DNA of 49,351 nucleotides from Octopus bimaculoides (lineage: Eukaryota): assembly GCF_001194135.2 (NCBI RefSeq), contig NC_068985.1, forward strand, positions 15,255,750 to 15,305,100, written 5' to 3'. Position 1 is the stretch's first letter; the number at the start of each line of letters is the position of its first letter. Under the pieces are notes generated by a model. It had not been told where the DNA came from. It saw nothing but the letters and a program-made list of their open reading frames with translations, and did no database searches. Shown here one piece after another: positions 1,564-28,948 of the stretch. Both the position numbers and the translations under genes were made by a program.

Positions 1564-1636
1564 GGGGAATTAGCTCAAGTGGTAGAGCGCTCGCTTAGCA
1601 TGTGAGAGGTACCGGGATCGATACCCGGATTCTCCA
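1564..1636 (+). tRNA. tRNA-Ala-AGC: tRNA-Ala(AGC), copy 1
   Basis: 73-nt cloverleaf GGGGAAT..ATTCTCCA with G3:U70 alanine identity pair, anticodon loop TTAGCAT, T-loop ATCGATA (A54) and G30:U40. TTTTT terminator at 1641-1645. Confidence 0.97.
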
Positions 1637-3159: not shown

Positions 3160-3817
3160 GCCGGCGTTCTTGCAGATACGTTAGCACGCCGGCGAAATGC
3201 TTCGTAGTATTTCACCTACCTTTACGTTCTGAGTTCAATTTCTACCTCAGTCAAATTTGCATTTCATCCTTTCAAGGTCCATAAATTAAGTACAAGTTGT
3301 GTACTAGGGTCGATTTAATCGACCGGCCTCCTCCCCCAAAATTTCGGGCTTTGTGCTTAGAGTAGAAAATATTATTTTCATAGTTTATATATTTGTTTTA
3401 TTATAAATGCAAAACAACACCACGGAGGAATCGACGCCAGCTTAAATAATAAACTGGGATAGGTTAACCGCGATATGGCGCGGGATTACTGTAGTAGAAA
3501 GGATTACTAGATTACTTTCAGAGTGGTGGAATGTTAGAGTATCGGACAAGATTCCTCCTGATTCTTTAGGTTCTGAGTTCAAACCCCATCGAGGTTAACT
3601 ATGCCTTTCAGCGTCGATAAAATAAAGTAACAGTCAAATAATCCTCTCTATTATAGGCTCGAGGCCTGAAATTTGGTGAAGGGGGATAGTCGATTACATC
3701 GGCCCTAGTACTCAACTGGTACTTAATTTATCGACCCCGAAAGGATAAAAGGCACAGTTGACATTGGTGGAATTTGAACTCAGAACGTAGCGACGTTCTG
3801 CCAGCTTGCAGCCTTAA
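3160..3817. mobile_element. Three SINE A copies/fragments (3160-3375 +, ~3520-3630 +, 3640-3817 -)
   Basis: B-box TTCTGAGTTCAA and family A body in each. Confidence 0.85.
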
Positions 3818-3855: not shown

Positions 3856-4187
3856 CGAAGGCGCGTGCCTTAGTGGTTAGGAGGATTCGGCTAACGATCG
3901 TGAGGTCGTGAGTTCGATACACGGCTGTGAAGTGAGTCTTTGAGCAAGACACTTTATTTCATGTGGCTCCAGTCCACTCAGCTGGCAAAAATGAGTTGTA
4001 CCTGTATTTCAAAGAGCCACCCTTGTCATATTCTGTCTCACGTTGAATCTCTGAGAACTACGTTAAGGATATACTTGCCGTGAAATACTCAACCACTTGT
4101 ACGTTAATTTCACGAACTGGCAGTACGGTTGATCGGATCGACTAGGACACTCGTCGTCGTAACCGACGGAGTACCAGTTTTTTTTTT
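3856..4187 (+). mobile_element. SINE D copy 1 (D body plus C-type tail)
   Basis: tRNA head, body TTGAGCAAGACACTTTATTTC..CTCCAGTCCACTCAGCTGGCAAAAATGAGT, then the family C tail. Confidence 0.85.
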
Positions 4188-11075: not shown

Positions 11076-11741
11076 GAATTAATTATCAAATCCTAATATA
11101 CCCTCCTTTAAATCCAGCTATACTGATGAGAAATATATGTTCATTACAGTTTTGAAACGCTTTTTTGAGTGCAACTATATATTCAAACATTAAATTCATT
11201 GAAACGCAAATTTCAGAATAGTTTTTGGAAATCTAGAAATGATTACATTATAAACAGTCATAAAGAAATAACGAATGATTACACAATATTTAATCGATAT
11301 TTCTGCGGGCGATTTAAAGTTTGCTGTTGCTTTTAACGAGAGATTCTATAGTCTTCATTTTGTGAACTTTATTAAAGGATTTTTTGCCGATGCAGAACAT
11401 TGCAATCACAGAACGTTTCTGTCATTTTATATGCGATTATCATTATTTCCTCCTACCAACCTCCACTTTAATTTCAATCATGAAAAATCAATAAAATATA
11501 TTATAATGTATGTATAAGAATCAATGAGACCAAGTTTTCGTTAATGGAGAATGTTTCATAAATTACAGATACTGAAATGTTAAGTAGCATACAGTGTTGG
11601 TGCGTTTTTATTATTATTTCACGTAACCAAAGATAACTATTCTTTGTAACGGGGACATAATATTACAGCGATAAAAAATATGACGTCATATAAAACTGAA
11701 ATCACTTGGAAAGACATTCTATAATATTGCTGACGTCATAA

Positions 11742-11957
11742 GGCGGCGAGCTGGTAGAAAGGTTAGCACGCCTGGCGAAATGCTTAGCGGTATTTCATCT
11801 GTCTTTACGTTCTGAGTTCAAATTCCGCCGAGGTCGACTTTGCTTTTCATCCTTTCGGGATCGATAAATTAAGTACCAGTTGCGTACTGGGGTCGATCTA
11901 ATCGACTGGCTCCCCCTCCCCCAAAATTTCGCGTCTTGTGCTTAGAGTAGAAAAGAA
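11742..11957 (+). mobile_element. Full-length SINE A with long TSD
   Basis: Complete head to tail. Flanked by aatattg(c/a)tgacgtcataag at 11723-11742 and 11956-11975. Confidence 0.92.
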
Positions 11958-13397
11958 TATTGATGACGTCATAAGAATTTATAAACTTTCGAGAGAACGT
12001 GAAACAATTATTTTTAGGAATAGTGGGTCTCGAAGTACGCAAAGCTATAAAAACCGAAGGATTTCCATNNNNNNNNNNNNNNNNNNNNNNNNNNNNNNNN
12101 NNNNNNNNNNNNNNNNNNNNNNNNNNNNNNNNNNNNNNNNNNNNNNNNNNNNNNNNNNNNNNNNNNNNNNNNNNNNNNNNNNNNNNNNNNNNNNNNNNNN
12201 NNNNNNNNNNNNNNNNNNNNNNNNNNNNNNNNNNNNNNNNNNNNNNNNNNNNNNNNNNNNNNNNNNNNNNNNNNNNNNNNNNNNNNNNNNNNNNNNNNNN
12301 NNNNNNNNNNNNNNNNNNNNNNNNNNNNNNNNNNNNNNNNNNNNNNNNNNNNNNNNNNNNNNNNNNNNNNNNNNNNNNNNNNNNNNNNNNNNNNNNNNNN
12401 NNNNNNNNNNNNNNNNNNNNNNNNNNNNNNNNNNNNNNNNNNNNNNNNNNNNNNNNNNNNNNNNNNNNNNNNNNNNNNNNNNNNNNNNNNNNNNNNNNNN
12501 NNNNNNNNNNNNNNNNNNNNNNNNNNNNNNNNNNNNNNNNNNNNNNNNNNNNNNNNNNNNNNNNNNNNNNNNNNNNNNNNNNNNNNNNNNNNNNNNNNNN
12601 NNNNNNNNNNNNNNNNNNNNNNNNNNNNNNNNNNNNNNNNNNNNNNNNNNNNNNNNNNNNNNNNNNNNNNNNNNNNNNNNNNNNNNNNNNNNNNNNNNNN
12701 NNNNNNNNNNNNNNNNNNNNNNNNNNNNNNNNNNNNNNNNNNNNNNNNNNNNNNNNNNNNNNNNNNNNNNNNNNNNNNNNNNNNNNNNNNNNNNNNNNNN
12801 NNNNNNNNNNNNNNNNNNNNNNNNNNNNNNNNNNNNNNNNNNNNNNNNNNNNNNNNNNNNNNNNNATATATATAAAATAATTGTAGAGATCGTACTTATT
12901 ACATACTATGCGTGTAAGTATGGCGAACAAATGGTTTCTTGTATATTTGTTTGTCAGATCAGTGAAAATATGTACAAATTCAGTTGATATATTTGTCGAC
13001 TAAAAATGCTTCTAGAACAGTTCTCTCACACCAGAACTGTTCTAACACTGATTTTGCTGGATAAAACTGGTTACATGTAATACAGTATCGTTGTGAACCT
13101 CTTAGCAAGTCTATTTATACACATAAAGAAATACAGGGCAGAATTTCCCGTCTCTTATGCAAACTGTTACATTGTCCAATGAATTCTTATCTTTAAAAGA
13201 CAGTAGCATGTAATCTGAGGGATATGCGGATGCTTTTTTTAGCAGACCAAGACACTGCCTAGAGGTTCCTATTTCGACTCGTTCTTGCTCACGTTTTGCC
13301 AATTGTGTTACGGAACTCCATGAAATTAAGACTCTGTTGGTAATGGAAACTCTGTTTCGAAGTAGATAGAAATATAATCATGAATATATAGCTTTCT

Positions 13398-14680: not shown

Positions 14681-15311
14681 CTTCTCCACAAGATGTCAAA
14701 AACTTTTTCCACCTTCAAGAGCAAACTGTTAGAAAGTAGTTAAGCTAACTACCCTAATGTAGAGTTAGGTCATACAAGTAACTTACCTATGTATTTTTAT
14801 ATAATATTGGTTTCTTAAGTTGATTTACATGTATAATATAGCTAATAACTTTGTCAACGAAGGCAGTTCTTCGTAAAGCAACAGTCCATCGTCACATAAT
14901 TATCTTTGTGGAAACTGTAAGTAAAATCCAGGTCTAATCATTGGACTCAAACTCCTTCCATGTTCGTTCATTAAATAATAACATAAAGTATCTTAAAATT
15001 TCAAATAATATTATTGTTTGAAAGTCGATAGTTGGATTCGAAATATGCATCAGTTATGAAAAAAGAAAATAGCATACAACAAAGCGCGTGATGACGTAGT
15101 TTATTCCAAGGTCGACCTGGAACAGAATGTCTATATTATTAAAAAATATAAAACGCGTAATTATCCAGTGAATTTCTGCAGCAGATAATTGAGTACATCA
15201 CGAAAATTACTTTATATAAAAATGATTCCGATTTAGTTGTGAATATGGTCCATTATGTAGATGTTACGCTGTTTAAAGATAGATAGAACTGATACTCGAA
15301 TGTTAAGAGCA

Positions 15312-15662
15312 GTCTTAAACATATCTTGAGAGCTCATCCCACCACGAAACGGCTGTATGGAGGGCTTCTGCTTGTTTCCACCATAACAAGGAAAAGGCGC
15401 TTGCGTTTTGTGGGGATATTGCTGGCAAGTGAGCTACCGTTATGGATGCCAAAGCATGGTCGTACTCGAGAAGGTCGTCTGAACACAACGTGTGTGGATT
15501 TACTCCCCAGAGACACTGGATTCCTCCTCGAAGACCTTCCTCAAAGCCTAGATGAAGACCTTCCTCGAAGACCTTCCGCAAGACCTAGATGAATGGCGTA
15601 TGCCGGTTAAAAATTTCCGAGCAAGCTTGACCAGATGATGATGGTGATGATGGTGGTGATGT
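15312..15662 (+). mobile_element. RTE-clade LINE 3' fragment
   Basis: LNIS.RAHPT..LYG..RKRRLRFVG..LWMPKHG..GR..DTG..EW followed by a (GAT)n tail. Small internal duplication at about 15527-15595. Confidence 0.75.
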
Positions 15663-15869
15663 AGATGTTTCATAATTTGTATATTGACAAAGGGATTATG
15701 ACATAACAGCAGAAGTTGGGGACCGCCCACCCGGCCCCTTAGTTTGCTTCTTCGTAACTATCTTTAAAATGTATATTTTCAATGTCATATTCCAGAAATA
15801 CATTTTAGATGACAAAAATTATTAATAAGTCGGAAAAGCTTGTAACTGTTTCTGTCGAACACCAAGAAT

Positions 15870-15956
15870 GTCACCAGGGTAGCCGAGTGGTCTTACGCAC
15901 TGAGTTTTAGTTGCAACCAGGTTATCTTGGCGTGGGTTCCAGTGCCACTTCTGACA
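15870..15956 (+). pseudogene. Decayed type-II tRNA (tRNA-Leu-like) pseudogene
   Basis: GTCA..TAGCCGAGTGGTCT..GCGTGGGTTCCAGTGCCACTTCTGACA follows the eukaryotic tRNA-Leu pattern. The long variable arm CAGG-TTAT-CTTG is in the correct register. Anticodon stem and T-loop are damaged and the acceptor has a 3-nt insertion. Confidence 0.75.
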
Positions 15957-16097
15957 AGAAACATTTAAGTTTGCCTCATTTAAAATTCTATTTCTAATGT
16001 CAAATTATCATGTGAATAGCATTTCAAAACCTCTTCAGGTAACAAAGAAATTAATTATAAGTCTAGTTATACGTCGATATTAGTTAATATTCGAAAG

Positions 16098-16446
16098 CAG
16101 TGATTCTCAACTAGGCTCCATATGGCCTCTGAGAATCCATATAAGATTTTGGGGTCCACGCAACAAGATAGTAAATTAGGGATTCACAATAGTATTTTAA
16201 GGGCCATGGAAAAAATTTTGTTTTAGATATATGTATTGGTATGTATTGGTATGTATTGCAAGAAACAGTTAGGTTTCTTTCTCTAACATTTTACATAGTT
16301 CAACCTACACAAGTTAATGTGTGAAAACATTAATAAACAACACTCTATAAAACTAGCGTTAAGACACCGAATGGCCACGAGGATCCACCAGAGTACAATA
16401 GTAATCAAAGGGGTCCATAGATTAAAAAAATGGTTGAGAATCCCTG
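16098..16446. mobile_element. hAT (Charlie-like) MITE, copy 1
   Basis: TIRs CAGTGATTCTCAAC / GTTGAGAATCCCTG. Degraded 8-bp TSD ttcgaaag/gtctaaat. Homologous to 46492-46819. Confidence 0.8.
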
Positions 16447-16512
16447 GTCTAAATCAACATTACGACAGATTTCCACTGTGACACTACTATAAACAGTGTA
16501 TAAATATGCTTT

Positions 16513-16849
16513 GTGGAGGCGCAATGGCCCAGTAGTTAGGNNNNNNNNNNTTATTGAGCGAAAACACCTAAAGCCCCACGAGGCTCCGGCAGGGTATAGT
16601 GGCGAACCCTGCTGTACTCTTTCACCACAACTTTCTCTCACTCTTACTTCCTGTTTTTGTTGTGCCTGTAATTCAAAGGGTCAGCCTTGTCACACTGTGT
16701 CACGCTGAATATCCCCGAGAACTACGTTAAGGGTACACATGTCTGTGGAGTGCTCAGCCACTTGCACGTTAATTTCACGAGCAGGCTGTTCCGTTGATCG
16801 GATCAACTGGAACCCTCGACGTCGTAAGCGACGGAGTGCCGACAACAAC
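16513..16849 (+). mobile_element. SINE C copy 1 (tRNA head, (CAA)n tail)
   Basis: 11-bp TSD AAATATGCTTT at 16502-16512 and 16850-16860. Nearly identical to 46088-46446. A small N-gap hides part of the head. Confidence 0.9.
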
Positions 16850-17088
16850 AAATATGCTTTGCTTTCGTGTTTTTTCTTTTTTACCATTTTAAATGTTTCT
16901 TACTGCAACTTGTGTTTGGATAGATTTCTTTAGCTCAGGGAATTTAGATGTACAATCAATTTTCTCATATCCATGAACAATATTTAGTTGCCAACTTTAG
17001 TATTGTCTGAATAACCAGTTACTAATATGCCATTGATTCAACTTAATATATTATATGGATTTAGTTTTGGCGGCAATTCGGCGTGAGT

Positions 17089-17161
17089 GGGGAATTAGCT
17101 CAAGTGGTAGAGCGCTTGCTTGGCATGCGAGAGGTACCGGGATCGATACCCGGATTCTCCA
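17089..17161 (+). tRNA. tRNA-Ala-GGC: tRNA-Ala with GGC anticodon (G34 variant), copy 2
   Basis: Same 73-nt body as the other copies, G3:U70 intact, anticodon arm CTTGC-TTGGCAT-GCGAG. T-run terminator at about 17168-17177. Confidence 0.9.
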
Positions 17162-17704
17162 TTTCCATTTTTTTTTACTTTTTAAAGTATTATTCATTCT
17201 TACTTTACAGTACTTTCATGTATTTAAATTCTAACTTGTATTTGCATATGTGTATTTCCATATTCAAACTGCACTAATATAAATTAGTTTTGAAGTTCTA
17301 TACTGTCGTATATTTAATTATTTGTTTATAAAAAGTATCTAACATATAGACGTACTCTACATGCCTACAGATGTATAGATCACGTTGTAATACATAAGTG
17401 TTGTTAATGTAGATATTACAGGCAGAAAATATGGCAATAGAATTTCGTTACATAAACGTAATAACATTACCTTCACCGTTACGGATGAATTACCCAGTAA
17501 AATTTGGGGTTTTAGGAAGTTTTTTTTATTCTGTTACATATCTTTACTTTCTTTCCTAATTTCTATTTCACAATTTCCTGTGGTGGGGGGGGGGTATGCG
17601 TGTGTGTGTGTGTGTGGGAGTAAAACAATGTAATTATTAGTTTATTTGTCAGAGTTCTGTCAGAAAGACAAATGGAATATGTAAGACAAGAGGAAACAAG
17701 TGGG

Positions 17705-17757
17705 ACAGAATGTCATTGAAGAGGTCACAGAATGTCATTGAAGAGGTCACAGAATGT
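17705..17757. repeat. 22-bp minisatellite, ~2.5 units
   Basis: acagaatgtcattgaagaggtc repeated. Confidence 0.85.
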
Positions 17758-18130
17758 GTGACGAAAGTAATTATTATAATTTCATGTGATATGTGAGCCG
17801 TATTCGAGTGAAATCTATCGAATACATTGGAAGACATATTTTGGTTTCTTAATATAATAGCAAGTTTGGTGACTCTTGAAAATTTAAATATATGCTATAA
17901 ACAAATTATTAAATGCAGGTGATTATCTTCTTTCAGGAAACTAAATGTAATATAATACACTAATGAGTCAATCAATCATGCATGCATACATTTTAAAATG
18001 AATTTTATATCGTAATATACTTTGAAACATATGCAAGAATGAAAGAAATTCAGGCTAGCAAAGCAATTTCTAGACACTATTAACATGAATTAACATTACT
18101 TTAACCTGAAAAAAAAACGAAAAAAAGCAA

Positions 18131-18203
18131 TGGAGAATCCAGGTATCGATCCTGGTACCTCTCGCATGCTAAGCGAGCGCTCTACCACTTGAGCTAATTC
18201 CCC
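18131..18203 (-). tRNA. tRNA-Ala-AGC: tRNA-Ala(AGC), copy 3
   Basis: Intact cloverleaf on the minus strand. T-stem CCAGG/CCTGG (A51-U63 instead of G51-C63), C40, T-runs downstream. Confidence 0.96.
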
Positions 18204-18290
18204 GCTTCAACAAAGTTGTGCAAAACTATATTAACATAATATGTAAAATTAAATTTGCATCATGTAAGTGGCAATATTGTGTCAATATTA

Positions 18291-19071
18291 AGGCGGCGAG
18301 CAGGCAAAAATGTTAGCACGCCGGGCGATAATGCTTAGTGGTATTTCGTTTGTCTTTACGTTCTGAGTTCAAATTCCACCAAGGTCGATTTTGCCTTTCA
18401 TCCTTTCGGGGTCGATAAATTAAGTACCAGTTACGCACTGGGGTCGATGTAATCGACTTAATCCCTTCGTCTGTCCTTGTTTGTCCCCTCTATGTTTAGC
18501 CCTTTGTGGGCAATAAAGAAATAAGAAACGTTAGCACGCTGGGCGAAATGCTTAGCGGCACTTCGTTTGTCTTTACGTTCTGAGTTCAAATTCCGCCGAG
18601 GTCGACTTTGCCTTTCATCCNNNNNNNNNNNNNNNNNNNNNNNNNNNNNNNNNNNNNNNNNNNNNNNNNNNNNNNNNNNNNNNNNNNNNNNNNNNNNNNN
18701 NNNNNNNNNNNNNNNNNNNNNNNNNNNNNNNNNNNNNNNNNNNNNNNNNNNNNNNNNNNNNTTCGTTTGTCTTTACGTTCTGAGTTCAAATTCCGCCGAG
18801 GTCGATTGTGCCTTTTATCCTTTTGGGGGTCGATAAATAAGTAGCAGTTGCGTACTGGGATTGATCTAATCGATTTAATCCCTTTGTCTGTCCTTGTTTG
18901 TCCCCTCTATGTTTAGCCCCCTTTGGGCAATGAAGAAATAAATATGAAATGTCGCCGAAGTCAACTTTACCTTTCATCTTTTCCGAGTCGATAAAAATAA
19001 GTACCAGTTAAGAACTGGGGTCGATGGAATTGACTTACCTCTTCTGGCCCTGTGCCAAAAATTTTCAAACC
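18291..19071 (+). mobile_element. Head-to-tail array of SINE A variant copies with an alternative tail
   Basis: Units at 18291-18525, 18526-gap, 18762-18941 and 18951-19071. Confidence 0.85.
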
Positions 19072-19440
19072 ATTCTGACAATATCAAATTCTGCAATTGA
19101 ATACCGTCTGTGGAAAAGAAAACAATGTTCATTGTATTAGCAGTTATTGTAAGAAATATGATATTAATAATAATAATAATAAATGCATACACTGCTAACA
19201 ATATCTCATTTATAAACAAGTTGAAACAAAATATCGAAAACTCATTTAGCCCCAATAAAAATCCATCAGAATCTTCAAAAGAAAATAATTTGTCTTATGT
19301 GAAAAATAGTTTCTTTTGATGGTGTAAACATTCATAGAAAACCTACCGTTGCATAAAAAATATACAAACGTAACATCAAAAAATAAATTATGAAAGATTA
19401 ATATTATTATGTACCAGATATACAACAAAATCGAAAACAT

Positions 19441-19905
19441 TCTATCCATCCATCTTTTTCGTTCAATATTCTTGGGAGGGTAGAATCCCCAGGCACTTCC
19501 TCCATAAGGCCCTATCAGAAGCAACCGTCTCTGCACTTTCCAGATGGATTCCAAAGGATGACCAACTGAGACTTTGGATATTAGCCAACCATCTCATTCT
19601 TAGTCTACCCTTGTCTCCGGCCGGTTTACTCGGCTTGAAGGATCCGTCTTGCGATTCCTTCCTGCAACATTCATATCATATGTTCGGAATACCGGAGCTG
19701 TGACCACTCAATGCTCAGAGGTAGACACTCGACCTGGAGAGACTCCTTGATCTCCGAGCTACGCACCCTATCAAGTAATGTAACTCCCGAGAACCTTCAA
19801 AGGAACCTCTTTTCGACCACTTCTGTTCCCGATCGTACTCTTTCGGTTTAATTCCAGCTTCGTGCCTGGCGCGAAGAAGACCACCAGAGCTTGCGATACG
19901 AAAGA
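19441..19905 (-). mobile_element. RTE-clade (Rex3/Expander-like) LINE 3' fragment
   Basis: Minus frame GVTLLDRVRSSEIKESLQVE..SQLRY..RRILQAE..RMRWL..SWSSFGI..DRALWR. Ends in GATGGATG. Confidence 0.78.
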
Positions 19906-20503
19906 GGCTCAAAAGACCAAGATCGAAAACAATTTTACGCTAAATGACTTTCAGAAGTGAGCTGTGTGGCTATAATCACTAATCTAGCTATTATATATTT
20001 AATACAAGAATTTTTGCTGGAGTTAATTGTGTTTTCATATCTCTTTTTAACTTGTTTATTATGCATGAGGTGTTATTACGTGCAGTGTGCTTGATTTTTT
20101 TAATATTCAACATTATATAAAGTATGTTTTTTGCATATATATATGAAACAAGTTTGAAATAATGGTCATTACATATTATTCCTTTACTGGAGCAAATTTG
20201 GCTTACAGCTGTTTCCAGTAGTCATTATAGGTACATTACTAATAGGTTTGTGTAAAAACCAGTTAGTCTGGAGCCCATCCGCGTAATTACGATACAGAAT
20301 TGTGAAGAACCATAATTTTTAACCCTACCAAAAGATTAAATAGACCTCTTCACTAATCTAAGAAATATTGTAACCTAATTTGTCACATACGCAAAAAGAA
20401 AATCAACGTTTTCAAAGCAATTCATAGAAACTACAACACAATAAAACATGAATTAACAATACTTTCTAACGAAAATGATGGGAAGCAAAAAAAGAAAAAG
20501 GAT

Positions 20504-20576
20504 TGGAGAATCCGGGTATCGATCCCGGTACCTCTCACATGCTAAGCGAGCGCTCTACCACTTGAGCTAATTCCCC
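20504..20576 (-). tRNA. tRNA-Ala-AGC: tRNA-Ala(AGC), copy 4
   Basis: Identical in sequence to copy 1. TTTTT terminator downstream. Confidence 0.97.
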
Positions 20577-20718
20577 AGTGCTGCGGTAAATTTCCAAAGC
20601 TATATATATATGATATGTAAAATGAAATTTACGTCATATATGTAAATAGATGGTTGTTATAGCAATAATTAATTTAGCAGTTGAATATTGCTTACAGGAA
20701 GGCGAAAAGTAATTGTTA

Positions 20719-20756
20719 ATGATAAGCAAACGCTCTACCGCTTCATCTAATTCCCT
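20719..20756 (-). pseudogene. 5'-half remnant of a tRNA-Ala gene
   Basis: Plus-strand atgataagcaaacgctctaccgcttcatctaattccct aligns to the 5' half of copy 6. Its flank (20760-21010) is homologous to the flank of copy 6 (21314-21600). The 3' half is absent. Confidence 0.8.
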
Positions 20757-21059
20757 ACCTGCAAGGATGTGATACGTAGGTATGTAATAAGTACAAATGT
20801 TTTGAAATGAAATTTGTTTATTTATTATACCTCAACAGAATTTCACTGAAAGTCTCCACCATTGGTAGAGAGAGCCTGCGAGGCGCTGAAGAAAAATGAG
20901 GAGATAACTGGGGTTGCAAAAAGGGTGTAGCGATGGATGGCAATGGCCCCTCTATTTTTCAATGGTGCACTTGAGTTTTGACAATAATGTTTAAAAATCG
21001 AATTGAAAACACATAATATGAGTAATCACGTCAAAAACCAAAACAATGTCAAGAAGAAA

Positions 21060-21132
21060 TGGAGAATCCGGGTATCGATCCCAGTACCTCTCACATGCTA
21101 AGCGAGCGCTCTACCACTTGAGCTAATTCCCC
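21060..21132 (-). tRNA. tRNA-Ala-AGC: tRNA-Ala(AGC), copy 5
   Basis: Intact cloverleaf with U50:G64 wobble in the T-stem and U40. Confidence 0.94.
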
Positions 21133-21240
21133 AGTCTTACTCAACTATTTCCAGATAATATATAAAATGAAATTTACGTCACATGTAGATAGATGGTTGT
21201 TGAACAATCTCTTCGAAAACCAAAACAATTTTAGACAAAA

Positions 21241-21313
21241 TGGAGAATCCGGGTATCGAACCCGGTACCTCTCGCATGCTAAGCAAGCGCTCTACCACTT
21301 GAGCTAATACCCC
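21241..21313 (-). tRNA. tRNA-Ala-AGC: tRNA-Ala(AGC), copy 6 (U54 variant)
   Basis: Cloverleaf with T-loop TTCGATA, U5.U68 mismatch in the acceptor stem, U29:G41 and G3:U70 intact. TTTT immediately downstream. Confidence 0.88.
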
Positions 21314-22099
21314 ACCTACGATAGTCTGGGACCTATGTACGTAATAATAAGTAGAAATGTTTTGAAATGAAATTGATTATTTGTTATGCTCCAATAGAAT
21401 TTCAGCGAAATTCTACACCCGTGGATCCCAAAGTGAACGGAACCGCACCCCTGTGGTGGTAGAGAGGGCCAGGGAAGCGTTGAAGAAAAATAGGTGATAA
21501 TGGGGTTGCTAAAAGGGTGTGGCGATGGATGGCAATGTCCCTTCTATTTTTCAATGGTACACTTGAGTTTATAAAATGTCTAAAAATCGAGGTGAAAAAT
21601 ATTGCATAAGAAAACTAGCTTCAAACAAGAACAGAGAACAAAAGGAAAACTTTAAAACTTAACGAAGCCGGTTATAAAATTCCCAAAAGAATTCCGTTCA
21701 AAGACGAAAACATATGACACTGATCAAAAAAAAGTCAACAAAGCAGAATGGACAAATACTAACGAAGAAATAAATGTTTGGCATTGTTAACATTCTTCAT
21801 TACTGCCACTATTTGTAAAAAGACTTTCTGGATGTTTCTACTGCAAGTGTTTGTACTGAACACCAGGTAACGCTACGACCATAGCTTCATCTATACGTTT
21901 CATTATTGTTTTTGCACTATTTATCGAACATCTTTTTATCGGTGTTTGTTATATTATTTTTTTTTATATTAACATTTCTTACTATTACCACTTTATTTGA
22001 AAAACAGAAAACATCAAAACATGCCAATACATAACCAAATTATTCAGATACAATAACCTCATTAGTAACTTTTGACCCCATAATCTTTAAAAACTTTAT

Positions 22100-23403
22100 T
22101 CACTTTAAAATCCTAAAAAATCATGATTGCTGTCATCCTCAATCAGTTTCTGGCTGTCATTTTCCTCAAGTTCCTGGAATTCATCAGCTTCTTTACATTC
22201 CTCAAAGCCGTCGTTGTTTTCAGAATCAGATGTATCGTTATCGTTATATAAAAAAAAATCACCCTCAGAGCTATCTAGGGTGTTATTGATTCCAGATTTT
22301 TTGAAATCTTTTAAAATTATTTCAGTTTTTACTGCTTCCCACGAATTTTTCACGAATTGTTCACTTCACTGAATGATAATATTTGCCGCATTATATGTTA
22401 CTGATATTTACTGCAATTCTGATTGAATAGATTGAGAATAGCAATGTGCTACCCTGAGCAGGTCCGTGTTTAAACTGGTGATGTCATTGATTTGGGACTG
22501 GCTGCTCACTGCAACTGCGCATATGTTTTGTCGGTGTCAGACTCGCTCGGTATTACCAAAACAATGTCCGCGAGATGGTTATAACGGAGAGACAATTGTT
22601 CCGTTGTTTGTTTAAGGGTTAGATAGAATTAAAATATTTTATGCTTCATCGAAGATTTGTTTTATTTATACGACGCTGTTACTTGTTGATACAGGAAATA
22701 TAATAATAGTTACTGGTTGGAAATCTATAAACACCTATGATAGCATGTGGTTTGCCCCACCACAGCCATTAGTTAACGAATTATCACAGTCATTTATGGA
22801 ACATTCTATGTTTAACCTATTATGGCATTCTGATAGTTTCAAAAATTATCATACGGAAAAATGTCTGGTTTTCAGTACAGACGTGAGCACTGAAGGAGTG
22901 TTTAAAATCCACGCCAATGGTGCATGTTAGTTTCCAAGCCGCTCGAGTGGCGGCGCCACTTCCATTGTTTTGGCTTGGTAAACAAAGATGGTAAGTTCAT
23001 GTTACAGTAGGCAAACTTTGATTACGGTATTATGAGGCCATTTTACTCATAGTATTTCCACCAGTGTTAATTGTGAATAAAGCCACAATGTTTAGGGAAG
23101 TAGAAAAGTTCAAATGTGTAATGCTGAGATTTATCAGGAAATAAACATAATTCGACAAAGCGCCACGGAGAACCATGAACCGCAGTACTGATAATTATGG
23201 GATGTTGGGATATGGAGGGAGTAAATGTAGTATGTACAAGGTCTGTACACATGGTGTACAGTGTAATATACCATTATATTCATTTAGGGGATGCCAAGGT
23301 CCAAAGCTGGACTTCAAATCTGACCTTCACCATGCAGGACACACAGTGATTTGAGGGTCAAATTTTGAGGAAAAAAGCGCGTCTTATATTCCGCAAAATA
23401 CGG
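22100..23403 (-). mobile_element. pogo/Tc2-like DNA transposon relic
   Basis: ORF 22105-22353 (WEAVKTEIILKDFKKSGINNTLDSSEGD plus acidic tail) resembles the pogo-family transposase C-terminus. Terminus-like TA-CCGTATTTTGCGGAATATAAGACGC on the minus strand ends at 23403. The second TIR was not found. Confidence 0.5.
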
Positions 23404-24167
23404 TATATTATACTGAGAACCCGCTAAGTAGCAGTTACAGGACTAAAACAGCAGCTGTCTTAAGCGAGTTACGTAACCAAATGGTAAAGAATTAATAAAC
23501 CATCGAAGTTTTCTAGATATCTACAACTCCCTTCGAACACTCAGAAAGAGTCTTCTCTCCGTTCATTTCCCAGAGAAATAGGCGACTCTGTTTGGCATGA
23601 GATTTCAGTTCATATCCAGGCTCCACATAATTTAACAGGACATTGGTCAAGCTACAAAAGTATGTCTACACGAATTTATCTTCCTAGATGTTGAATTACA
23701 AACTCACCAAAACCACTTGGTCAATGAATATTCCGCTTATAATTTCGTAATCCTTCAGCGTAGTACGAAATACAGACTTACTTGCTGTTCTTCAATTCTT
23801 TGTTAGAAGCCTTTTACTGGTAGTTATCAATATTGACCTTATATTTTTCTGACATCAACATCATTTCAAAGTTCATCCAGAGACAGTCTTGACTGATATT
23901 TGTTCATGCTGCCGTTTACCAGTTGATTAACATCTTTTTCAGTGTTTGATTAGTGTTTATTTTACCAACCCCAGTGTGTTTGAACACAGAACGGAAATAT
24001 ACGTAACTAAAAACAGCTAACCATTTTCTTTATTGTGTCACTGATTGTGCCATTAGCAGCCGTTATATGTTTAGCATAATATTCATATTAGCAACAACAG
24101 TAAAGTGATAGCGACGATATTACTACTACCACTATTACTACAGCGCGAATGACTGTCACATTCGTTG

Positions 24168-24177
24168 GTGACGTCAC
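24168..24177. promoter_or_regulatory. CRE-like palindrome GTGACGTCAC upstream of the ORF
   Basis: Full TGACGTCA consensus about 70 nt before the ATG. Function not demonstrated. Confidence 0.4.
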
Positions 24178-24248
24178 AGTTAAAGCTAAAACAATAAATC
24201 ATTTAGTGTGATTTCTATCCATTGACAAGTCAATCTGAGGTGAGCAGC

Positions 24249-25691
24249 ATGAATTTCACAGAGAATGATAGTTTTTCGCGTTATGAACACCTCAGCTCCC
24301 AAACTGAAAAAGTAGCAGATCATTCACACCTTCCAGGCGATCTGCACAAAACTATACGACTAAACAAATGCAGCGATTTTACAGAAGATAATATTGGACA
24401 TATTGGTTCTCAAGATAACGATCGTGAAAATACAAGTGAGAATGATGCTGATAGTGAGATGGAAATAATTGAAATAGGTGTCGAGAAAAGTCAAAACAAT
24501 AAACAATTAAACAATGATGGTGAATCAAAAGGCGAGAAAACCAAGATATGCTGTACGTGTGGAGTAGCAGACGATAAGGGCGTGAATGAAAACAACAGAC
24601 CGGAATGCAAGACTTTGAATAGAGAAGAGGGTGTCAATCCTGACAGCTATGCAGTTAAATCAAACAACGGAATCGTAGAACAAGATAAATGTGTACCAAA
24701 GAAAGACGAGGATAATTTTGCAACGAACAAAAAATGCATGACCAAAGGAAAGAAAGTATGTTCGACATCAAGAATAAACCTACATCCCACAGAAATTAAT
24801 CGAAATAGTGTAACTAAGTTACCTTACTCATTGCGTTGTGCTCTCAAATATTCTAAGAAGGAAAATAATGATGAAATTTCGTCAAACAGAAGGCCTTTTG
24901 AAGAGTACCACCATTTCATAACACAAGAAAGACCCTGCCTATGTGTACCTAAACTATACCCTCCGCGTATATCGTCACGACGGCATAAAACTTTGTCGGA
25001 AGGCAGGATATATAAGTCATATGACAGAAAAACAACCTGTACACCGAGAAGAATTTCTGAGAGCAAAGTTTCAGTGCCTCTGAAACGTCGAACCTCTTCG
25101 TATTCACGGAATACTAATAATTCAACAGAGCTGAATTCACCTTTACTGCCATGCCAATATAATTCACAGCGATTTAGCCCGTTAGGAGATTCTCTAGAAC
25201 TTGCTCGATTACGTTGGGCCCAGGAAACATCATTTCGTCTTCATAGCCCTTCGAACCTTGGGCGAAACACAACGTCACGATATAGGTTTCCAAGTCCTGG
25301 TAGCAGCAGCTCATTACCATCAGAAGCATCAATTCGTCTCTGTCGCATTTCGAGTGCTGGGCCACATGCAGTAGTTGATCCTCGAAAATTTCAACATCAA
25401 GTATGTCCTTTCGTAACATGGGACCGTGATACTTCGAGATGGAGTCGTGATTTTCACGATGGTTTCGCAGAATTTTGTGGAGGTGCTTATAGTCCAAAGC
25501 CAACGAGTGACTCACGTGGGTCATGTATTTCAGATTTTGTCGCAGGACGTGATTCTAAGTCAACGGATGAAATATACGCTCAACTCTTAAACAAGAAGTG
25601 GGACAACATATATTATGGTCGCAATAATCTAAAACAGAGAGAACCACGAATCAAATATCAAATGCCTGAAATTAAACGGCGTTTGTTTTAA
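24249..25691 (+). CDS. Uncharacterised 480-aa protein, largely low-complexity (Ser/Asn/Glu/Arg-rich), encoded in one uninterrupted block
   Basis: 1.44-kb open frame with no TE or microsatellite character in an AT-rich background. First ATG at 24249 (the track's start at 24222 is TTG), in-frame stop upstream at 24204, AATAAA at 25709-25714. It could also be a large terminal exon. Confidence 0.75.
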   Translation: MNFTENDSFSRYEHLSSQTEKVADHSHLPGDLHKTIRLNKCSDFTEDNIGHIGSQDNDRENTSENDADSEMEIIEIGVEKSQNNKQLNNDGESKGEKTKICCTCGVADDKGVNENNRPECKTLNREEGVNPDSYAVKSNNGIVEQDKCVPKKDEDNFATNKKCMTKGKKVCSTSRINLHPTEINRNSVTKLPYSLRCALKYSKKENNDEISSNRRPFEEYHHFITQERPCLCVPKLYPPRISSRRHKTLSEGRIYKSYDRKTTCTPRRISESKVSVPLKRRTSSYSRNTNNSTELNSPLLPCQYNSQRFSPLGDSLELARLRWAQETSFRLHSPSNLGRNTTSRYRFPSPGSSSSLPSEASIRLCRISSAGPHAVVDPRKFQHQVCPFVTWDRDTSRWSRDFHDGFAEFCGGAYSPKPTSDSRGSCISDFVAGRDSKSTDEIYAQLLNKKWDNIYYGRNNLKQREPRIKYQMPEIKRRLF

Positions 25692-25708
25692 ATACTAAGA
25701 AGATTTTA

Positions 25709-25714
25709 AATAAA
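25709..25714 (+). terminator. Putative polyadenylation signal AATAAA
   Basis: 17 nt after the ORF stop codon. The hexamer is common in AT-rich DNA. Confidence 0.45.
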
Positions 25715-25759
25715 GTAAAACTGAAAATGGTGTATTGTCTTTTAATTCGAGAAAAAAAC

Positions 25760-25909
25760 ATGTGGCTTGACGGTAGGAAACTTGCTTCCCAACCACATGG
25801 TTCCGGGTTCCGTCCCATTGCGTGGCACCTTAAGAAAGTGTCTTCTACTACAGCCTCAGACCGACCAAAACCTTGTGTGTGGATTTGGCCAACGGAAACA
25901 GGAAACTCG

Positions 25910-25973
<64 letters not shown>

Positions 25974-26210
25974 ATATATCTATGTGTACGTGTGCATCTT
26001 TGTATCTATGTTTTCCCCCACCACCGCTTGACAATCGGTGTTGGTTTCTTTATGTCCTCGTAACTTAGCAATTCGGCAAAAGAGACCGATAGAATAAGTA
26101 CCAGGGTTTAAACATACGTACTGGGGTTGATTCATTCGACTAAAAATTCTTCAAAGCGGTGCTCCAGCATGGCTGCAATCTAATGATTGCAAAAAAAAAA
26201 TGAAAAGAAA
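25760..26210 (+). mobile_element. Full-length SINE B just downstream of the ORF
   Basis: Complete structure with internal (TG)n. Confidence 0.92.
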
Positions 26211-26372
26211 AAGTTCTGAAAATATCTCTCTGTAATAATTGCCGATCTATTGGTTGATGGGCTGAATTCTCCGGTTAAGCATGACATCATTTAGAGAAAG
26301 AGAAAGAAGAGGAAGAAAGAGACGGAGAAAGAGTAAACATAAAAAGTTTAAGATGCGTGCCCTTACTAGGCT

Positions 26373-26438
<66 letters not shown>

Positions 26439-26527
26439 ACAGTGAGTAAAGGAATGTTACACGGACTCAAATACACACACACAAACACACATACACACAC
26501 ACGCACAAACACACACACACACGCACA

Positions 26528-26565
<38 letters not shown>

Positions 26566-26600
26566 AACAAACACACAGTGAAGGAGAAAGAAGAGANNNN
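26373..26600. repeat. (AGT)n followed by compound (CA)n microsatellites
   Basis: Directly visible. Confidence 0.95.
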
Positions 26601-27079
26601 NNNNNNCAAACAAACACACAGTGAAGGAGAAAGAAGAGAAGGAAGAGGCAAGCAGGTTGTAACTGAGAGTGACGTTATGGGAGGAGTTATGCAAATAAGA
26701 AATTTGTTTTATTTAAATTTATTTTAATGTAATAAACAATTTTCTTTTGAAAATTAAAATTCATTTCATCATTTTCTATCAACACCAAGAAATTTCTTAA
26801 AAGTGAAATCATAATTATTGCATGCATCGCATATTTCTTGATATTCCGATTGAGGCAAAAGTATACCTTCCAGGTATGACGGGTAACATTTGTTTGAAAT
26901 ATTAATTAGCTGTACACATTAGCTCTCCAATTGAAATTCTACACACTAATTAACAATAATGAAAACGATATATTTTTCTTTTTTACCACTGCTCTAGATA
27001 TGCAATCAAAAGGAATCAATCTGCTAAATTTCGGCTACATATTCAGTTTGTGCGTCAGAAACCTTAGTAGAATATTTGT

Positions 27080-27714: not shown

Positions 27715-28948
27715 TTAGGTCATCAAGTATGAAATTTGTAGTAAGGTATATGGTAAACTTTAACAGCTGTTCATTTTGCACCATTATTATTTTTTGACAA
27801 TCTTTATTTTTTGTTAGAAAGCTGACATCTATTTCTTTATTCTAACTCGTTTTGCGCTTTAAAAAGTATTTATAAATCGTGTTTTGGTATTTTTGTTTAG
27901 AGATGAATAAGTCGAAAATTCGTACAGTCTTTTTGAAATATGAGTTCTTTCTTGGAAATACAGCATCACAGACAGCTCAGAATATTAATGGAGTATTTCA
28001 TTCTGATGTTATTACACAGCAGACAGTATCAAATTGGTTTTCAAAAGTTCATTCTGGTAATTTTGACCTCACAAATGAGCAACGCGGTCGACCAGAAACA
28101 AAGGTGGATAATGACGAACTGAAAGCCACTGTCAAGTCAGATCCATCTCAAAGTGACCGTGAACTATCGTTACTGTTTGGTGTTGGCAAGCAAACAATAT
28201 TGACTCACCTAGTTCAAATCGATAAAGTGAAAAAGTTGAATAAATGGGTTCCACACGGACTCAATGAAAATCAGAAACAACAACGTTTGGAAGCCTGCAT
28301 TATGCTACTGTGTCGTCACAAAAATGAATCCTTTTTGAATCAAATTGTAACACGTGATGAGAAATGGAACCAATACAACAACCGTAAGCGTTCAGCAAAA
28401 TGGTCCGACAAAGACGGGCCACCAAAACACAGTCCAAAAAGCAAAATTCATCAAAAGACGCTGATGGTGTGTGTTTGGTGGTCTGGCGCAGGTGTGATCC
28501 ATTATGATTTCATTAAACTTGGCTCATCAATCACAGCCGAAGTATACTGCAGCCAACTGGAACAAATGATGCAGAAACAGCCTAGATTAGTCAACAGATC
28601 CACTCTTATTTTATTGCAAGACAATGCCAGACCACACGTCGAAAAATGACATTGGCGACACTACAGGAGTTGGAAGTTCTCCATCATCCACCATACTCAC
28701 TTGATCTTGCTCCCATTGACTACCACTTCTTCCAGAATTTGGATAACTTTTTGATAGGAAAAATATTTAATTCCGGTGATACTGTAAAACAGGCCTTCCA
28801 AGATTTTATTGACTCTAGATTGCCAGGCTTTTACAGTTCCAGGATGGACAAGCTACTGCTGAAATGGCAAAAGTGTATTGACAATATGGGTGCATACTTT
28901 GATGAATAAAAATATTCCTTGTATTTCTAAAACATCTTTTTTTCTTTT
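27715..28948 (+). mobile_element. Mariner DNA transposon (Hsmar1/SETMAR-like) with a defective transposase, ATG 27903 to stop 28909
   Basis: Motifs WVPHGL, TRDEKW, QDNARPH and YSLDLAP..DYHFF. TA-TTAGGT left end. One-base frameshift at about 28646. Right end lost in an N-gap. Confidence 0.92.

What the first reader, a model, noticed from the sequence alone, without database searches (positions are those of the whole stretch)
17089..17161. Structurally intact tRNA-Ala with a GGC anticodon (G34) inside an AGC cluster
Seen: this copy matches its neighbours (G3:U70, A/B boxes, all stems paired, T-run terminator, TATA-like 5' flank), but its anticodon is GGC, with U32 and U38. Established: eukaryotes decode GCU/GCC with A34 edited to inosine by ADAT2/3 and normally lack tRNA-Ala(GGC), which is the bacterial/archaeal solution. 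Inference: a genomic A-to-G at the site normally edited A-to-I would give an editing-independent alanine decoder biased to GCC, which is notable in a lineage known for A-to-I editing. It could equally be a neutral variant or an assembly error.
Basis: partly seen in the sequence, partly recalled or inferred. Interest (0 to 1): 0.7.

Follow-up and report, generated by a model that had tools for sequence, protein, structure and literature searches.

The report
Octopus alanine tRNA gene with G34
One of six alanine tRNA genes in this octopus DNA carries a single A-to-G change at the first anticodon base; the change is real in the assembly and rare among eukaryotes, but it is most likely an ordinary point mutation in a highly redundant gene family, not a special adaptation.

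Summary
Window 17089-17161 (+) is a structurally intact tRNA-Ala gene with anticodon GGC (ARAGORN; Rfam tRNA 55.8 bits, second best of six). The other five copies are all AGC. Its other 72 bases are identical to the A34 tRNA at a syntenic Octopus vulgaris locus, so it is that body plus one A34G transition. Its 5' flank is anciently homologous to the flanks of three A34 neighbours. It is therefore an old DNA-level duplicate, not a retrocopy, a SINE or bacterial contamination. It keeps G3:U70, A73, the A and B boxes, a shared upstream TATA-like block and a T9 terminator. G34 is rare in this family: the same anticodon arm with A34 gave at least 120 metagenome stretches, and with G34 gave none. 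Literature already describes such events as isoacceptor anticodon shifts, and as exceptions to G34-sparing in large tRNA gene sets. An A34G human tRNA-Ala lacking a Watson-Crick 32-38 pair was toxic in HeLa cells, and this copy has U32/U38 with no compensating change. The best reading is a neutral or slightly deleterious point mutation. If the gene is expressed, its tRNA would read GCC and GCU without ADAT. The link to cephalopod A-to-I editing confuses ADAR with ADAT. I could not test conservation in other species, raw reads or expression. Interest is low.

The parts
17089..17161 (+). tRNA-Ala(GGC) gene, copy c2, 73 nt, no encoded CCA
   Evidence: ARAGORN. Rfam RF00005 55.8 bits, full length. 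Cloverleaf at minimum free energy.
17122..17122 (+). G34, the wobble base. It is the only difference from the A34 body of the O. vulgaris tRNA at L001 926-998.
   Evidence: Base-by-base comparison of the bodies.
17120..17126 (+). Anticodon loop UUGGCAU, with U32 and U38, which cannot form a Watson-Crick pair
   Evidence: Sequence. All 127 family members in the metagenome loci also have U32/U38. A bacterial tRNA-Ala(GGC) in L003 has A32/U38.
17096..17107 (+). A-box region (tRNA positions 8-19, TAGCTCAAGTGG), identical in all six copies
   Evidence: Alignment A1. The match to the Pol III A-box consensus is from established knowledge.
17140..17150 (+). B-box region (positions 52-62, GGATCGATACC) with the family-typical A54
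   Evidence: Alignment A1. The A54/A58 and A15/A48 type is described by Westhof et al. 2020 (PMC7566577).
17048..17068 (+). Upstream block ATATTATATGGATTTAGTTTT (-41 to -21), TATA-like. Copies c3 and c4 have it at the same distance; c5 has it about 11 nt closer.
   Evidence: Alignment A2. The 5' flank alignments score above shuffled controls.
17168..17176 (+). T9 run 7 nt past the 3' end, a Pol III terminator-like signal
   Evidence: Sequence.
16952..17088 (+). 5' flank with ancient homology to the 5' flanks of c3, c4 and c5
   Evidence: BLAST: 16952-17176 matches 20716-20490 at 73.6%, and 17036-17199 matches 18254-18087 at 77.6%. Global alignments score 20-24 against a shuffled maximum of 15-16.
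1564..1636 (+). c1, tRNA-Ala(AGC), C29/U40 type (G30oU40)
18131..18203 (-). c3, tRNA-Ala(AGC), with a fully Watson-Crick anticodon stem and a compensated A51:U63 pair
20504..20576 (-). c4, tRNA-Ala(AGC), body identical to c1
21060..21132 (-). c5, tRNA-Ala(AGC), C29/U40 type with U50oG64
21241..21313 (-). c6, tRNA-Ala(AGC), U29/C40 type like c2, but with A5U (breaks the 5:68 pair) and A54U
   Evidence: It does not fold to the cloverleaf at minimum free energy.

Best explanation
Copy c2 is a nuclear, Pol III-type tRNA-Ala gene. It belongs to an old, locally duplicated cluster of metazoan-type tRNA-Ala(AGC) genes in an Octopus genome. It acquired a single A-to-G transition at the wobble position, which is an isoacceptor anticodon shift. 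The change persists because it is nearly neutral: AlaRS ignores the anticodon, GGC still reads only alanine codons as its cognates, and this is one copy among many. If it is transcribed (inferred from intact A and B boxes, the shared upstream TATA-like block and the T9 run), the tRNA would be charged with alanine through G3:U70. It would not be an ADAT2/3 substrate, and it would read GCC by G:C and GCU by G:U. It would lose the GCA reading that I34 gives. It keeps the U32/U38 loop of I34-type tRNAs rather than a pairable 32-38 combination. Published experiments on the human equivalent therefore predict a slightly error-prone, mildly deleterious decoder rather than an improved one. Shown here: the sequence, the fold, the single-base difference, the flank homology and the rarity of G34. 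Inferred: expression, charging, decoding, and a recent, lineage-specific origin.
For: The gene is intact and scores as well as its neighbours. Its body is identical at 72 of 73 positions to the A34 tRNA at the syntenic O. vulgaris locus L001 926-998, and differs only at position 34. The 5' flanks of c2, c3, c4 and c5 are detectably homologous, while the bodies stay 69-70 of 73 identical to c2. This points to a DNA duplication with long-term constraint or gene conversion on the body. Other copies carry a similar number of private changes: c6 two, one of them structure-breaking; c3 two; c5 one. One private change in c2 is therefore unremarkable. G34 is selected against in general. The G34 arm pattern gave 0 metagenome hits against at least 120 stretches for A34. 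In the 120 loci returned by the A34-arm scan (so their Ala-AGC count is by ascertainment), the 466 predicted tRNAs include no G34 in any of the eight ADAT families. The literature describes this kind of event. Isoacceptor shifts occur mostly at the first anticodon base and scale with gene redundancy (PMC3923123). Large tRNA gene sets break G34-sparing (PMC5372738). No miscoding within the alanine box is expected (PMC5372738). An A34G human tRNA-Ala was toxic unless 32-38 could pair (PMC7293025).
Against: The orthologous c2 locus in O. vulgaris lies about 3-4 kb beyond the fetched locus and could not be reached, so lineage-specificity is inferred and not shown. No reads, population data or expression data were available. 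The gene has every signal of an active copy, and its flanks are old, so long-term retention of a G34 gene is not excluded. If G34 is deleterious, its survival in an apparently expressible gene needs either recency or low expression, and neither was shown.
Confidence: 0.7

Rival explanations
1. Adaptive, retained ADAT-independent tRNA-Ala(GGC). On this reading the copy is kept by selection to read GCC (and GCU) without inosine, for example in particular tissues or conditions.
For: It has an intact cloverleaf, identity elements, promoter-like and terminator-like signals. Its flanks are old while its body is intact. G34 is otherwise absent from this family, so an intact G34 gene stands out.
Against: It differs by a single base from an A34 body present in the genus. 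There is no compensating 32-38 change, unlike the bacterial tRNA-Ala(GGC) in L003, which has A32/U38, and contrary to what PMC7293025 found necessary. Its -65 to -45 upstream segment is the most diverged among c2-c5. One copy among many cannot shift the tRNA pool much. The ADAR/ADAT link offered in support is not valid.
Confidence: 0.1
2. Assembly or sequencing artefact, or a heterozygous allele chosen by the assembler. On this reading the organism's fixed sequence has A34.
For: The window is a gap-rich draft scaffold with 19 N runs totalling 7021 N. tRNA bodies are multi-copy repeats, which are prone to mis-assembly.
Against: By inference, a collapsed repeat would give the majority base A, not G. 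Position 34 is only 34 nt from unique 5' flank, so ordinary reads anchor it. The surrounding 2 kb block (16551-18620) is gap-free. This was not tested with reads.
Confidence: 0.1
3. Transcriptionally silent relic. On this reading the gene looks intact but is not used, so the anticodon is free to drift.
For: The upstream segment shared by c3-c5 (TGACGTAAATTTCATTTTAC-like) is poorly conserved in c2. A neighbouring copy, c6, is decaying. A truncated copy lies at about 20722-20765.
Against: The body has no other change, the stems are all paired, and the TATA-like block and T9 are kept. A long-silent copy would be expected to show flank-like divergence.
Confidence: 0.07
4. DNA footprint of inosine. 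On this reading an I34-containing (pre-)tRNA was reverse-transcribed, with I read as G, and the cDNA converted the genomic copy.
For: The change sits at exactly the edited base and is in the A-to-G direction. I34 is already present on precursor tRNAs (PMC4446420, title and abstract).
Against: The 5' flank is homologous to the paralogues' flanks, and no CCA or poly-A follows the gene, so it is not a retrocopy. A37 is unchanged, although by my own knowledge it becomes m1I37 in eukaryotic tRNA-Ala. An ordinary transition explains the change more simply.
Confidence: 0.03

Closest known systems
Metazoan cytosolic tRNA-Ala(AGC) of the A15/A48 + A54/A58 type (Westhof et al. 2020, PMC7566577), including the five neighbouring copies and the O. 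vulgaris tRNA at L001 926-998
   Same: The body is identical at 72 of 73 positions to the O. vulgaris gene. It has G3:U70, A73, A15/A48, A54/A58, a U32/U38 loop, the same A and B boxes, and a 5' flank shared with c3-c5.
   Different: It has G34 instead of A34, so it cannot be deaminated to I34 and would not read GCA.
Synthetic 'impossible tRNA' itRNA-Ala (human tRNA-Ala with A34G) of Pernod et al. 2020, PMC7293025
   Same: It has the same design by nature: a eukaryotic tRNA-Ala body, a single A34G, and a 32/38 pair that cannot form a Watson-Crick pair.
   Different: It is a natural genomic copy in an octopus, and its dose and expression are unknown. The published toxicity was measured by transfecting transcripts into HeLa cells, not from one gene among many.
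Isoacceptor anticodon shifts and exceptions to G34-sparing in large tRNA gene sets (Rogers & Griffiths-Jones 2014, PMC3923123; Maraia & Arimbasseri 2017, PMC5372738; Strigamia tRNA-Ala-GGC expansion, PMC4244043; Schistosoma japonicum, PMC2770079)
   Same: It is a first-anticodon-base substitution within a redundant family, giving a G34 gene alongside A34 genes for the same box.
   Different: It is a single high-scoring copy inside a duplicated cluster, not a SINE-like expansion. The orthologue-based proof of a shift was not obtained here.
Bacterial tRNA-Ala(GGC), for example E. coli (Ledoux et al. 2009, as cited in PMC7293025 and PMC8007984) and the metagenomic example L003 161-234
   Same: It has the GGC anticodon, G3:U70, and the same expected decoding of GCC and GCU.
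   Different: The bacterial form has A32-U38, which tunes decoding, and a different acceptor, D and T arm. c2 has U32/U38 and a metazoan body, so it is not a member by descent.

Membership tests
tRNA (Rfam RF00005) / eukaryotic cytosolic tRNA-Ala | Cloverleaf that scores above the family threshold over its full length | tested here: met
   55.8 bits against a gathering score of 29, model positions 1-71. ARAGORN calls it tRNA-Ala. The minimum-free-energy fold is a cloverleaf.
tRNA (Rfam RF00005) / eukaryotic cytosolic tRNA-Ala | Alanine identity: G3:U70 wobble pair and A73 | tested here: met
   Read from the sequence: G at 17091, T at 17158, A at 17161.
tRNA (Rfam RF00005) / eukaryotic cytosolic tRNA-Ala | Is actually aminoacylated with alanine and used in translation | not testable with these tools
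   This needs charging assays or tRNA-seq.
Metazoan A15/A48 + A54/A58 tRNA-Ala subtype (PMC7566577) | R15/A48 and A54/A58 purine-purine pairs occurring together | tested here: met
   A15, A48, A54 and A58 are present in c2. 123 of 127 related genes in the metagenome loci have R15, and all 127 have A48/A54/A58.
ADAT2/3 substrate tRNAs (I34 tRNAs) | Genomically encoded A34 | tested here: not met
   Position 34 (17122) is G.
Bacterial/archaeal-type tRNA-Ala(GGC) | GGC anticodon | tested here: met
Bacterial/archaeal-type tRNA-Ala(GGC) | [quoted passage not shown] | tested here: not met
   c2 has U32/U38. The bacterial example L003 has A32/U38.
Bacterial/archaeal-type tRNA-Ala(GGC) | Body related by descent to prokaryotic tRNA-Ala | tested here: not met
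   The body is 72 of 73 identical to an Octopus A34 gene, and its flanks are homologous to those of neighbouring eukaryotic copies.
Isoacceptor anticodon shift (PMC3923123) | A single anticodon-base difference from otherwise near-identical family members, within the same amino-acid box | tested here: met
   Only position 34 differs from the O. vulgaris L001 926-998 body, and 3-4 positions differ from the window paralogues.
Isoacceptor anticodon shift (PMC3923123) | A syntenic orthologue in a related species carries the other anticodon | not tested
   The c2 orthologue lies beyond the 10 kb flank of L001, and no anchor protein was available.
'Impossible tRNA' sensu Pernod et al. 2020 | Eukaryotic four-codon-box tRNA with G34 and a non-pairable 32/38 | tested here: met
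   G34 with U32/U38. The definition is from PMC7293025.
'Impossible tRNA' sensu Pernod et al. 2020 | Miscoding or toxicity when present in cells | not testable with these tools
   This needs expression and fitness assays or mass spectrometry.
tRNA pseudogene / tRNA-derived SINE | Degenerate stems, or a multi-copy element extending beyond the tRNA | tested here: not met
   All stems are paired. Outside the tRNA body, the sequence from 16841 to 18006 matches only the flanks of c3 and c4 within the window (plus one weak AT-rich match in L001), not dispersed repeats.

The most novel reading that the evidence does not exclude
The G34 copy is fixed, conserved across Octopus species and expressed. 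It would then be a natural 'impossible tRNA' that a metazoan tolerates or uses as an ADAT-independent GCC/GCU reader. It would offer an in vivo test of why eukaryotes exclude G34 from four-codon boxes.
Probability: 0.07. Interest if true: 0.55.

Novelty: new member of a known kind. Interest (0 to 1): 0.2.

Why it matters
Eukaryotes almost never keep G34 tRNA genes in the boxes served by inosine. Whether this is economy, regulation or avoidance of miscoding is still debated (PMC5372738, PMC7293025). A natural, intact tRNA-Ala(GGC) with the unmodified U32/U38 loop is a ready-made case for asking whether such a tRNA is made and tolerated in an animal. As it stands, it is one point variant in a redundant family, of a kind already catalogued in other large tRNA gene sets. 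Its value is as a data point and not as a discovery.

Tried and rejected
1. I looked up the two + strand ORFs that overlap c2, to find independent contigs of the same locus. Neither is on record.

2. I ran a protein search with the three tRNA-spanning ORF translations concatenated, to find called ORFs over G34 variants anywhere. No same-locus hit came back. The only G34 hits, P0098 and P0099, share one tRNA-derived peptide, and the one fetched (P0098, locus L003) is a bacterial-type tRNA-Ala(GGC).

3. I tried to reach the O. vulgaris orthologue of c2 through the 489-aa ORF homologue P0001. Locus L001 stops at about window position 20700, roughly 3-4 kb short of where c2 should lie. I screened the window upstream of c2 for an anchor ORF and found nothing that looks coding. 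I therefore did not spend the third large protein search.

4. I considered Logan contigs as a substitute for raw reads and rejected the idea. With k=31 a unique flank cannot be linked to position 34 across the shared tRNA body.

5. I considered bacterial contamination or horizontal transfer and rejected it, because the body and flanks are those of the neighbouring octopus copies.

6. I considered a retrocopy or SINE origin and rejected it on flank homology, the lack of CCA or poly-A, and flanks that are single-copy in the window.

7. An Rfam scan of 15000-22000 at permissive thresholds found no further RNA genes.

Full report
**Observation**

ARAGORN predicts six tRNA-Ala genes in the 49,351-base window. 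Five have anticodon AGC. The one at 17088-17162 (+) has GGC. It scores 55.8 bits against a gathering score of 29, over the full model, with no non-canonical pair flagged. That is the second best score of the six, which range from 51.6 to 57.5 bits.

- G3:U70 and A73 are present.
- The anticodon loop is UUGGCAU, with U32 at 17120, G34 at 17122 and U38 at 17126.
- The anticodon stem has one U29oG41 wobble and a G30-C40 pair.
- No CCA is encoded.
- A T9 run lies at 17168-17176.
- A TATA-like ATATTAT lies at -41 to -35.

The RNA folds into the cloverleaf at minimum free energy (-26.9 kcal/mol), like copies c1 and c3.

**Where the window comes from**

The window is a gap-rich draft scaffold, with 19 N runs totalling 7021 N. 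It is AT-rich and full of microsatellites and SINE-like repeats. A 489-aa ORF at 24222-25691 has a 78%-identical homologue annotated in Octopus vulgaris. The O. vulgaris locus around that gene (L001, chromosome OX597818.1) is collinear with window ~20700-27000 at 88-94% nucleotide identity. So the window comes from an Octopus species close to, but not the same as, O. vulgaris. I did not determine which species.

**What the gene is**

All six bodies belong to the metazoan tRNA-Ala type that Westhof et al. describe, with A15/A48 and A54/A58 purine-purine pairs (PMC7566577). They fall into three subtypes according to the anticodon stem:

| Subtype | Copies | Note |
|---|---|---|
| C29/U40 | c1, c4, c5 | G30oU40 wobble |
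| C29/C40 | c3 | all Watson-Crick |
| U29/C40 | c2, c6 | U29oG41 wobble |

The single intact tRNA in the O. vulgaris locus (L001 926-998, minus strand, AGC) is co-orthologous to the c5/c6 pair. Its body is identical to c2 at every position except 34. So c2 is an Octopus tRNA-Ala(AGC) body plus one A-to-G transition.

The flanks show how the copy arose. The 100-140 nt upstream of c2 aligns with the upstream flanks of c3, c4 and c5:
- BLAST gives 73.6% identity over 231 nt to the c4 region and 77.6% over 170 nt to the c3 region.
- Global alignments score 20-24 against a shuffled maximum of 15-16.
- The four copies share a block ATATYAT.T..A.ATAG.TT, which in c2 lies at -41 to -21.

The flanks are therefore old and diverged, while the bodies stay 94-96% identical (69-70 of 73) to c2. 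The copies arose by DNA-level duplication, and the bodies have been held together by selection or gene conversion. This excludes a retrocopy, a SINE and contamination. Outside the tRNA body, the sequence from 16841 to 18006 matches only the flanks of c3 and c4 (plus one weak AT-rich match in L001), not dispersed repeats.

**How unusual G34 is**

Two exact-pattern scans of the metagenome contig collection gave a background for this conserved anticodon arm. With G34 (GGTAGAGCGCTNGCTTGGCATGNGAGAGGTA) there were 0 hits.

In the 120 fetched loci (639 kb), ARAGORN finds 466 tRNAs. The alanine genes are 127 AGC, 7 TGC, 6 CGC and 0 GGC, though the AGC count follows from selecting these loci by the A34 arm pattern. 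None of the eight ADAT-substrate families has a G34 gene. All 127 members of the family have U32/U38. G34-sparing is thus strictly kept in this sample, and c2 is a genuine exception.

The exception is not statistically surprising as a mutation, however. The six copies carry six private substitutions in 438 sites. An A34G in a cluster like this is expected about 5% of the time under neutrality, and more or less certainly somewhere in a genome with many copies. Other copies carry similar numbers of private changes. Copy c6 has two changes relative to O. vulgaris. One of them (A5U) breaks the acceptor stem, and c6 no longer folds to a cloverleaf at minimum free energy.

**How it would work**

By established rules, AlaRS recognises G3:U70 and not the anticodon. 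This is restated in PMC7293025. ADAT2/3 needs A34. G34 pairs with C and wobbles with U. If c2 is transcribed, it would therefore yield an alanine-charged reader of GCC and GCU that does not depend on editing and lacks the GCA reading of I34. The intact A and B boxes, the shared upstream block at the same distance as in c3 and c4, and the T9 run make transcription plausible but do not show it.

Two published results bear on whether this would help the animal:
- Maraia and Arimbasseri note that no miscoding within the box is expected from such G34 tRNAs. They also note that G34-sparing is nonetheless pervasive, and that large tRNA gene sets (cow, cat, zebrafish) break it (PMC5372738).
- Pernod et al. 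built exactly this molecule, a human tRNA-Ala with only A34G. It lowered HeLa cell metabolic activity, but not once positions 32 and 38 were made able to pair. This parallels the A32-U38 tuning of E. coli tRNA-Ala(GGC) (PMC7293025).

c2 has U32/U38 with no compensating change. A bacterial tRNA-Ala(GGC) that surfaced in my searches (L003 161-234) has A32/U38. So c2 looks like an untuned G34 tRNA. It is tolerable at low dose and is not an optimised decoder.

**Comparison with what is known**

The event fits the category of isoacceptor anticodon shift. Rogers and Griffiths-Jones found 44 such shifts, 39 of them at the first anticodon base, with numbers that scale with tRNA gene redundancy (PMC3923123). 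Predicted tRNA-Ala-GGC genes have been reported in other animals. Strigamia has 322, which the authors judged mostly pseudogenes or transposon-derived (PMC4244043). Schistosoma japonicum also has them (PMC2770079). I found no paper describing one in a cephalopod nuclear genome.

c2 is a member of the metazoan tRNA-Ala family. It is not an ADAT substrate. It is not a bacterial-type tRNA-Ala(GGC), because it fails the 32-38 feature and the test of descent. It meets the structural definition of Pernod's 'impossible tRNA'.

The suggestion that the change is notable because cephalopods are known for A-to-I editing mixes two systems. By my own knowledge, cephalopod recoding is ADAR editing of mRNA, whereas I34 is made by ADAT2/3.

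The proposed tRNA-seq assignment also has a flaw. I34 is read as G in cDNA, and an A34 gene with the identical body exists in the genus. Reads with G at position 34 on the U29/C40 body would therefore not identify c2. Leader or trailer reads, or an inosine-specific assay, are needed.

**Rival explanations**

- Adaptive retention (about 0.1) is not excluded, because the orthologue could not be examined.
- An artefact or heterozygous allele (about 0.1) is unlikely by inference: a collapsed repeat would show A, and position 34 is within reach of unique flank. It was not tested with reads.
- A silent relic (about 0.07) is hinted at by the diverged -65 to -45 upstream segment.
- A footprint of reverse-transcribed I34 (about 0.03) is an appealing idea. 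It is disfavoured by the flank homology, the absence of CCA or poly-A, and the unchanged A37.

**What could not be done**

The c2 orthologue in O. vulgaris lies about 3-4 kb beyond the 10 kb flank of L001. No annotated or plausible coding ORF upstream could serve as an anchor. The ORFs overlapping c2 are not in the gene collection. Raw reads, population data and expression data are outside these tools.

**Verdict**

This is a real, intact tRNA-Ala(GGC) gene in the assembly. It is a single-base isoacceptor shift within an old duplicated tRNA-Ala(AGC) cluster, and it is most likely neutral or slightly deleterious. It is a new example of a known kind. Interest is low (0.2), with a small chance (about 7%) that it is a conserved, expressed ADAT-independent decoder.

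Noticed in passing
window 21241-21313 (-), compared with L001 926-998: Copy c6 carries two changes relative to the O. vulgaris tRNA: A5U, which breaks the 5:68 acceptor pair (flagged by Rfam), and A54U, which breaks the A54/A58 with A15/A48 co-occurrence rule of PMC7566577. It no longer folds to the cloverleaf at minimum free energy, so it is probably a decaying copy.
   Followed up: partly
window 21060-21313, compared with L001 840-1100: The window has a tandem pair, c5 and c6 (181-nt period), where O. vulgaris has one tRNA. That tRNA's upstream flank matches c6 and its downstream flank matches c5. This points to a lineage-specific tandem duplication or an unequal-crossover loss. The c5 and c6 bodies are of different subtypes, which suggests gene conversion.
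   Followed up: partly
window ~20722-20765 (-) with 20766-21010; L001 443-517 (-): A truncated 5' half of a tRNA-Ala lies next to a ~250-nt duplicate of the region upstream of c6 (21320-21560). O. vulgaris has a full-length but degenerate tRNA-Ala pseudogene at the matching place. ARAGORN does not call either.
   Followed up: partly
window 18225-18250, 20610-20640, 21165-21190 (upstream of c3, c4, c5): The three copies share an upstream motif at about -65 to -45: TGACGTAAATTTCATTTTAC in c4 and c5, and TGATGCAAATTTAATTTTAC in c3. The c3 version contains an ATGCAAAT octamer-like word and the c4/c5 version a CRE-like TGACGTAA. The motif is poorly conserved in c2. It may be an upstream promoter element or just duplication history.
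   Followed up: no
window 15873-15956 (+): A degenerate tRNA-like sequence with a long variable arm. ARAGORN calls it only at a relaxed threshold, as 'tRNA-Stop (tta)' with mispaired stems. Rfam does not report it at E<=1. It is probably a decayed type II tRNA or a SINE head.
   Followed up: partly
window 24222-25691 (+); L001 10001-11386 and 16678-19461; L002 10001-11407: A 489-aa single-exon ORF with no Pfam domain. It has homologues only in octopods: 78% and 46% identity to two O. vulgaris 'hypothetical predicted proteins', and 66% to a protein from a Logan contig. It appears to belong to a small lineage-specific family that has a repeated-segment paralogue next door in O. vulgaris.
   Followed up: partly
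window 27879-28649 (+): A Mos1/mariner-type transposase fragment (Pfam HTH_48, and Transposase_1 with a partial DDE domain), truncated by an assembly gap upstream.
   Followed up: partly
window 18285-18620, 18762-19037, 11735-11960, 39850-40068, 2160-2324, 3162-3376 and others: Many copies of a ~330-nt SINE-like repeat, also abundant in the O. vulgaris loci at 80-92% identity. Another ~290-nt repeat lies at 16551-16839, 46088-46425 and 3995-4175, just upstream of c2.
   Followed up: no
L083 (33 tRNAs in 5.8 kb), L063 (23 in 3.7 kb), L020, L077, L075/L060; L044 263-333: Some metagenome contigs recovered with the A34 pattern carry very dense mixed tRNA arrays. One has a predicted tRNA with anticodon tta ('Stop') inside a compact array. 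The source organisms are unknown.
   Followed up: no
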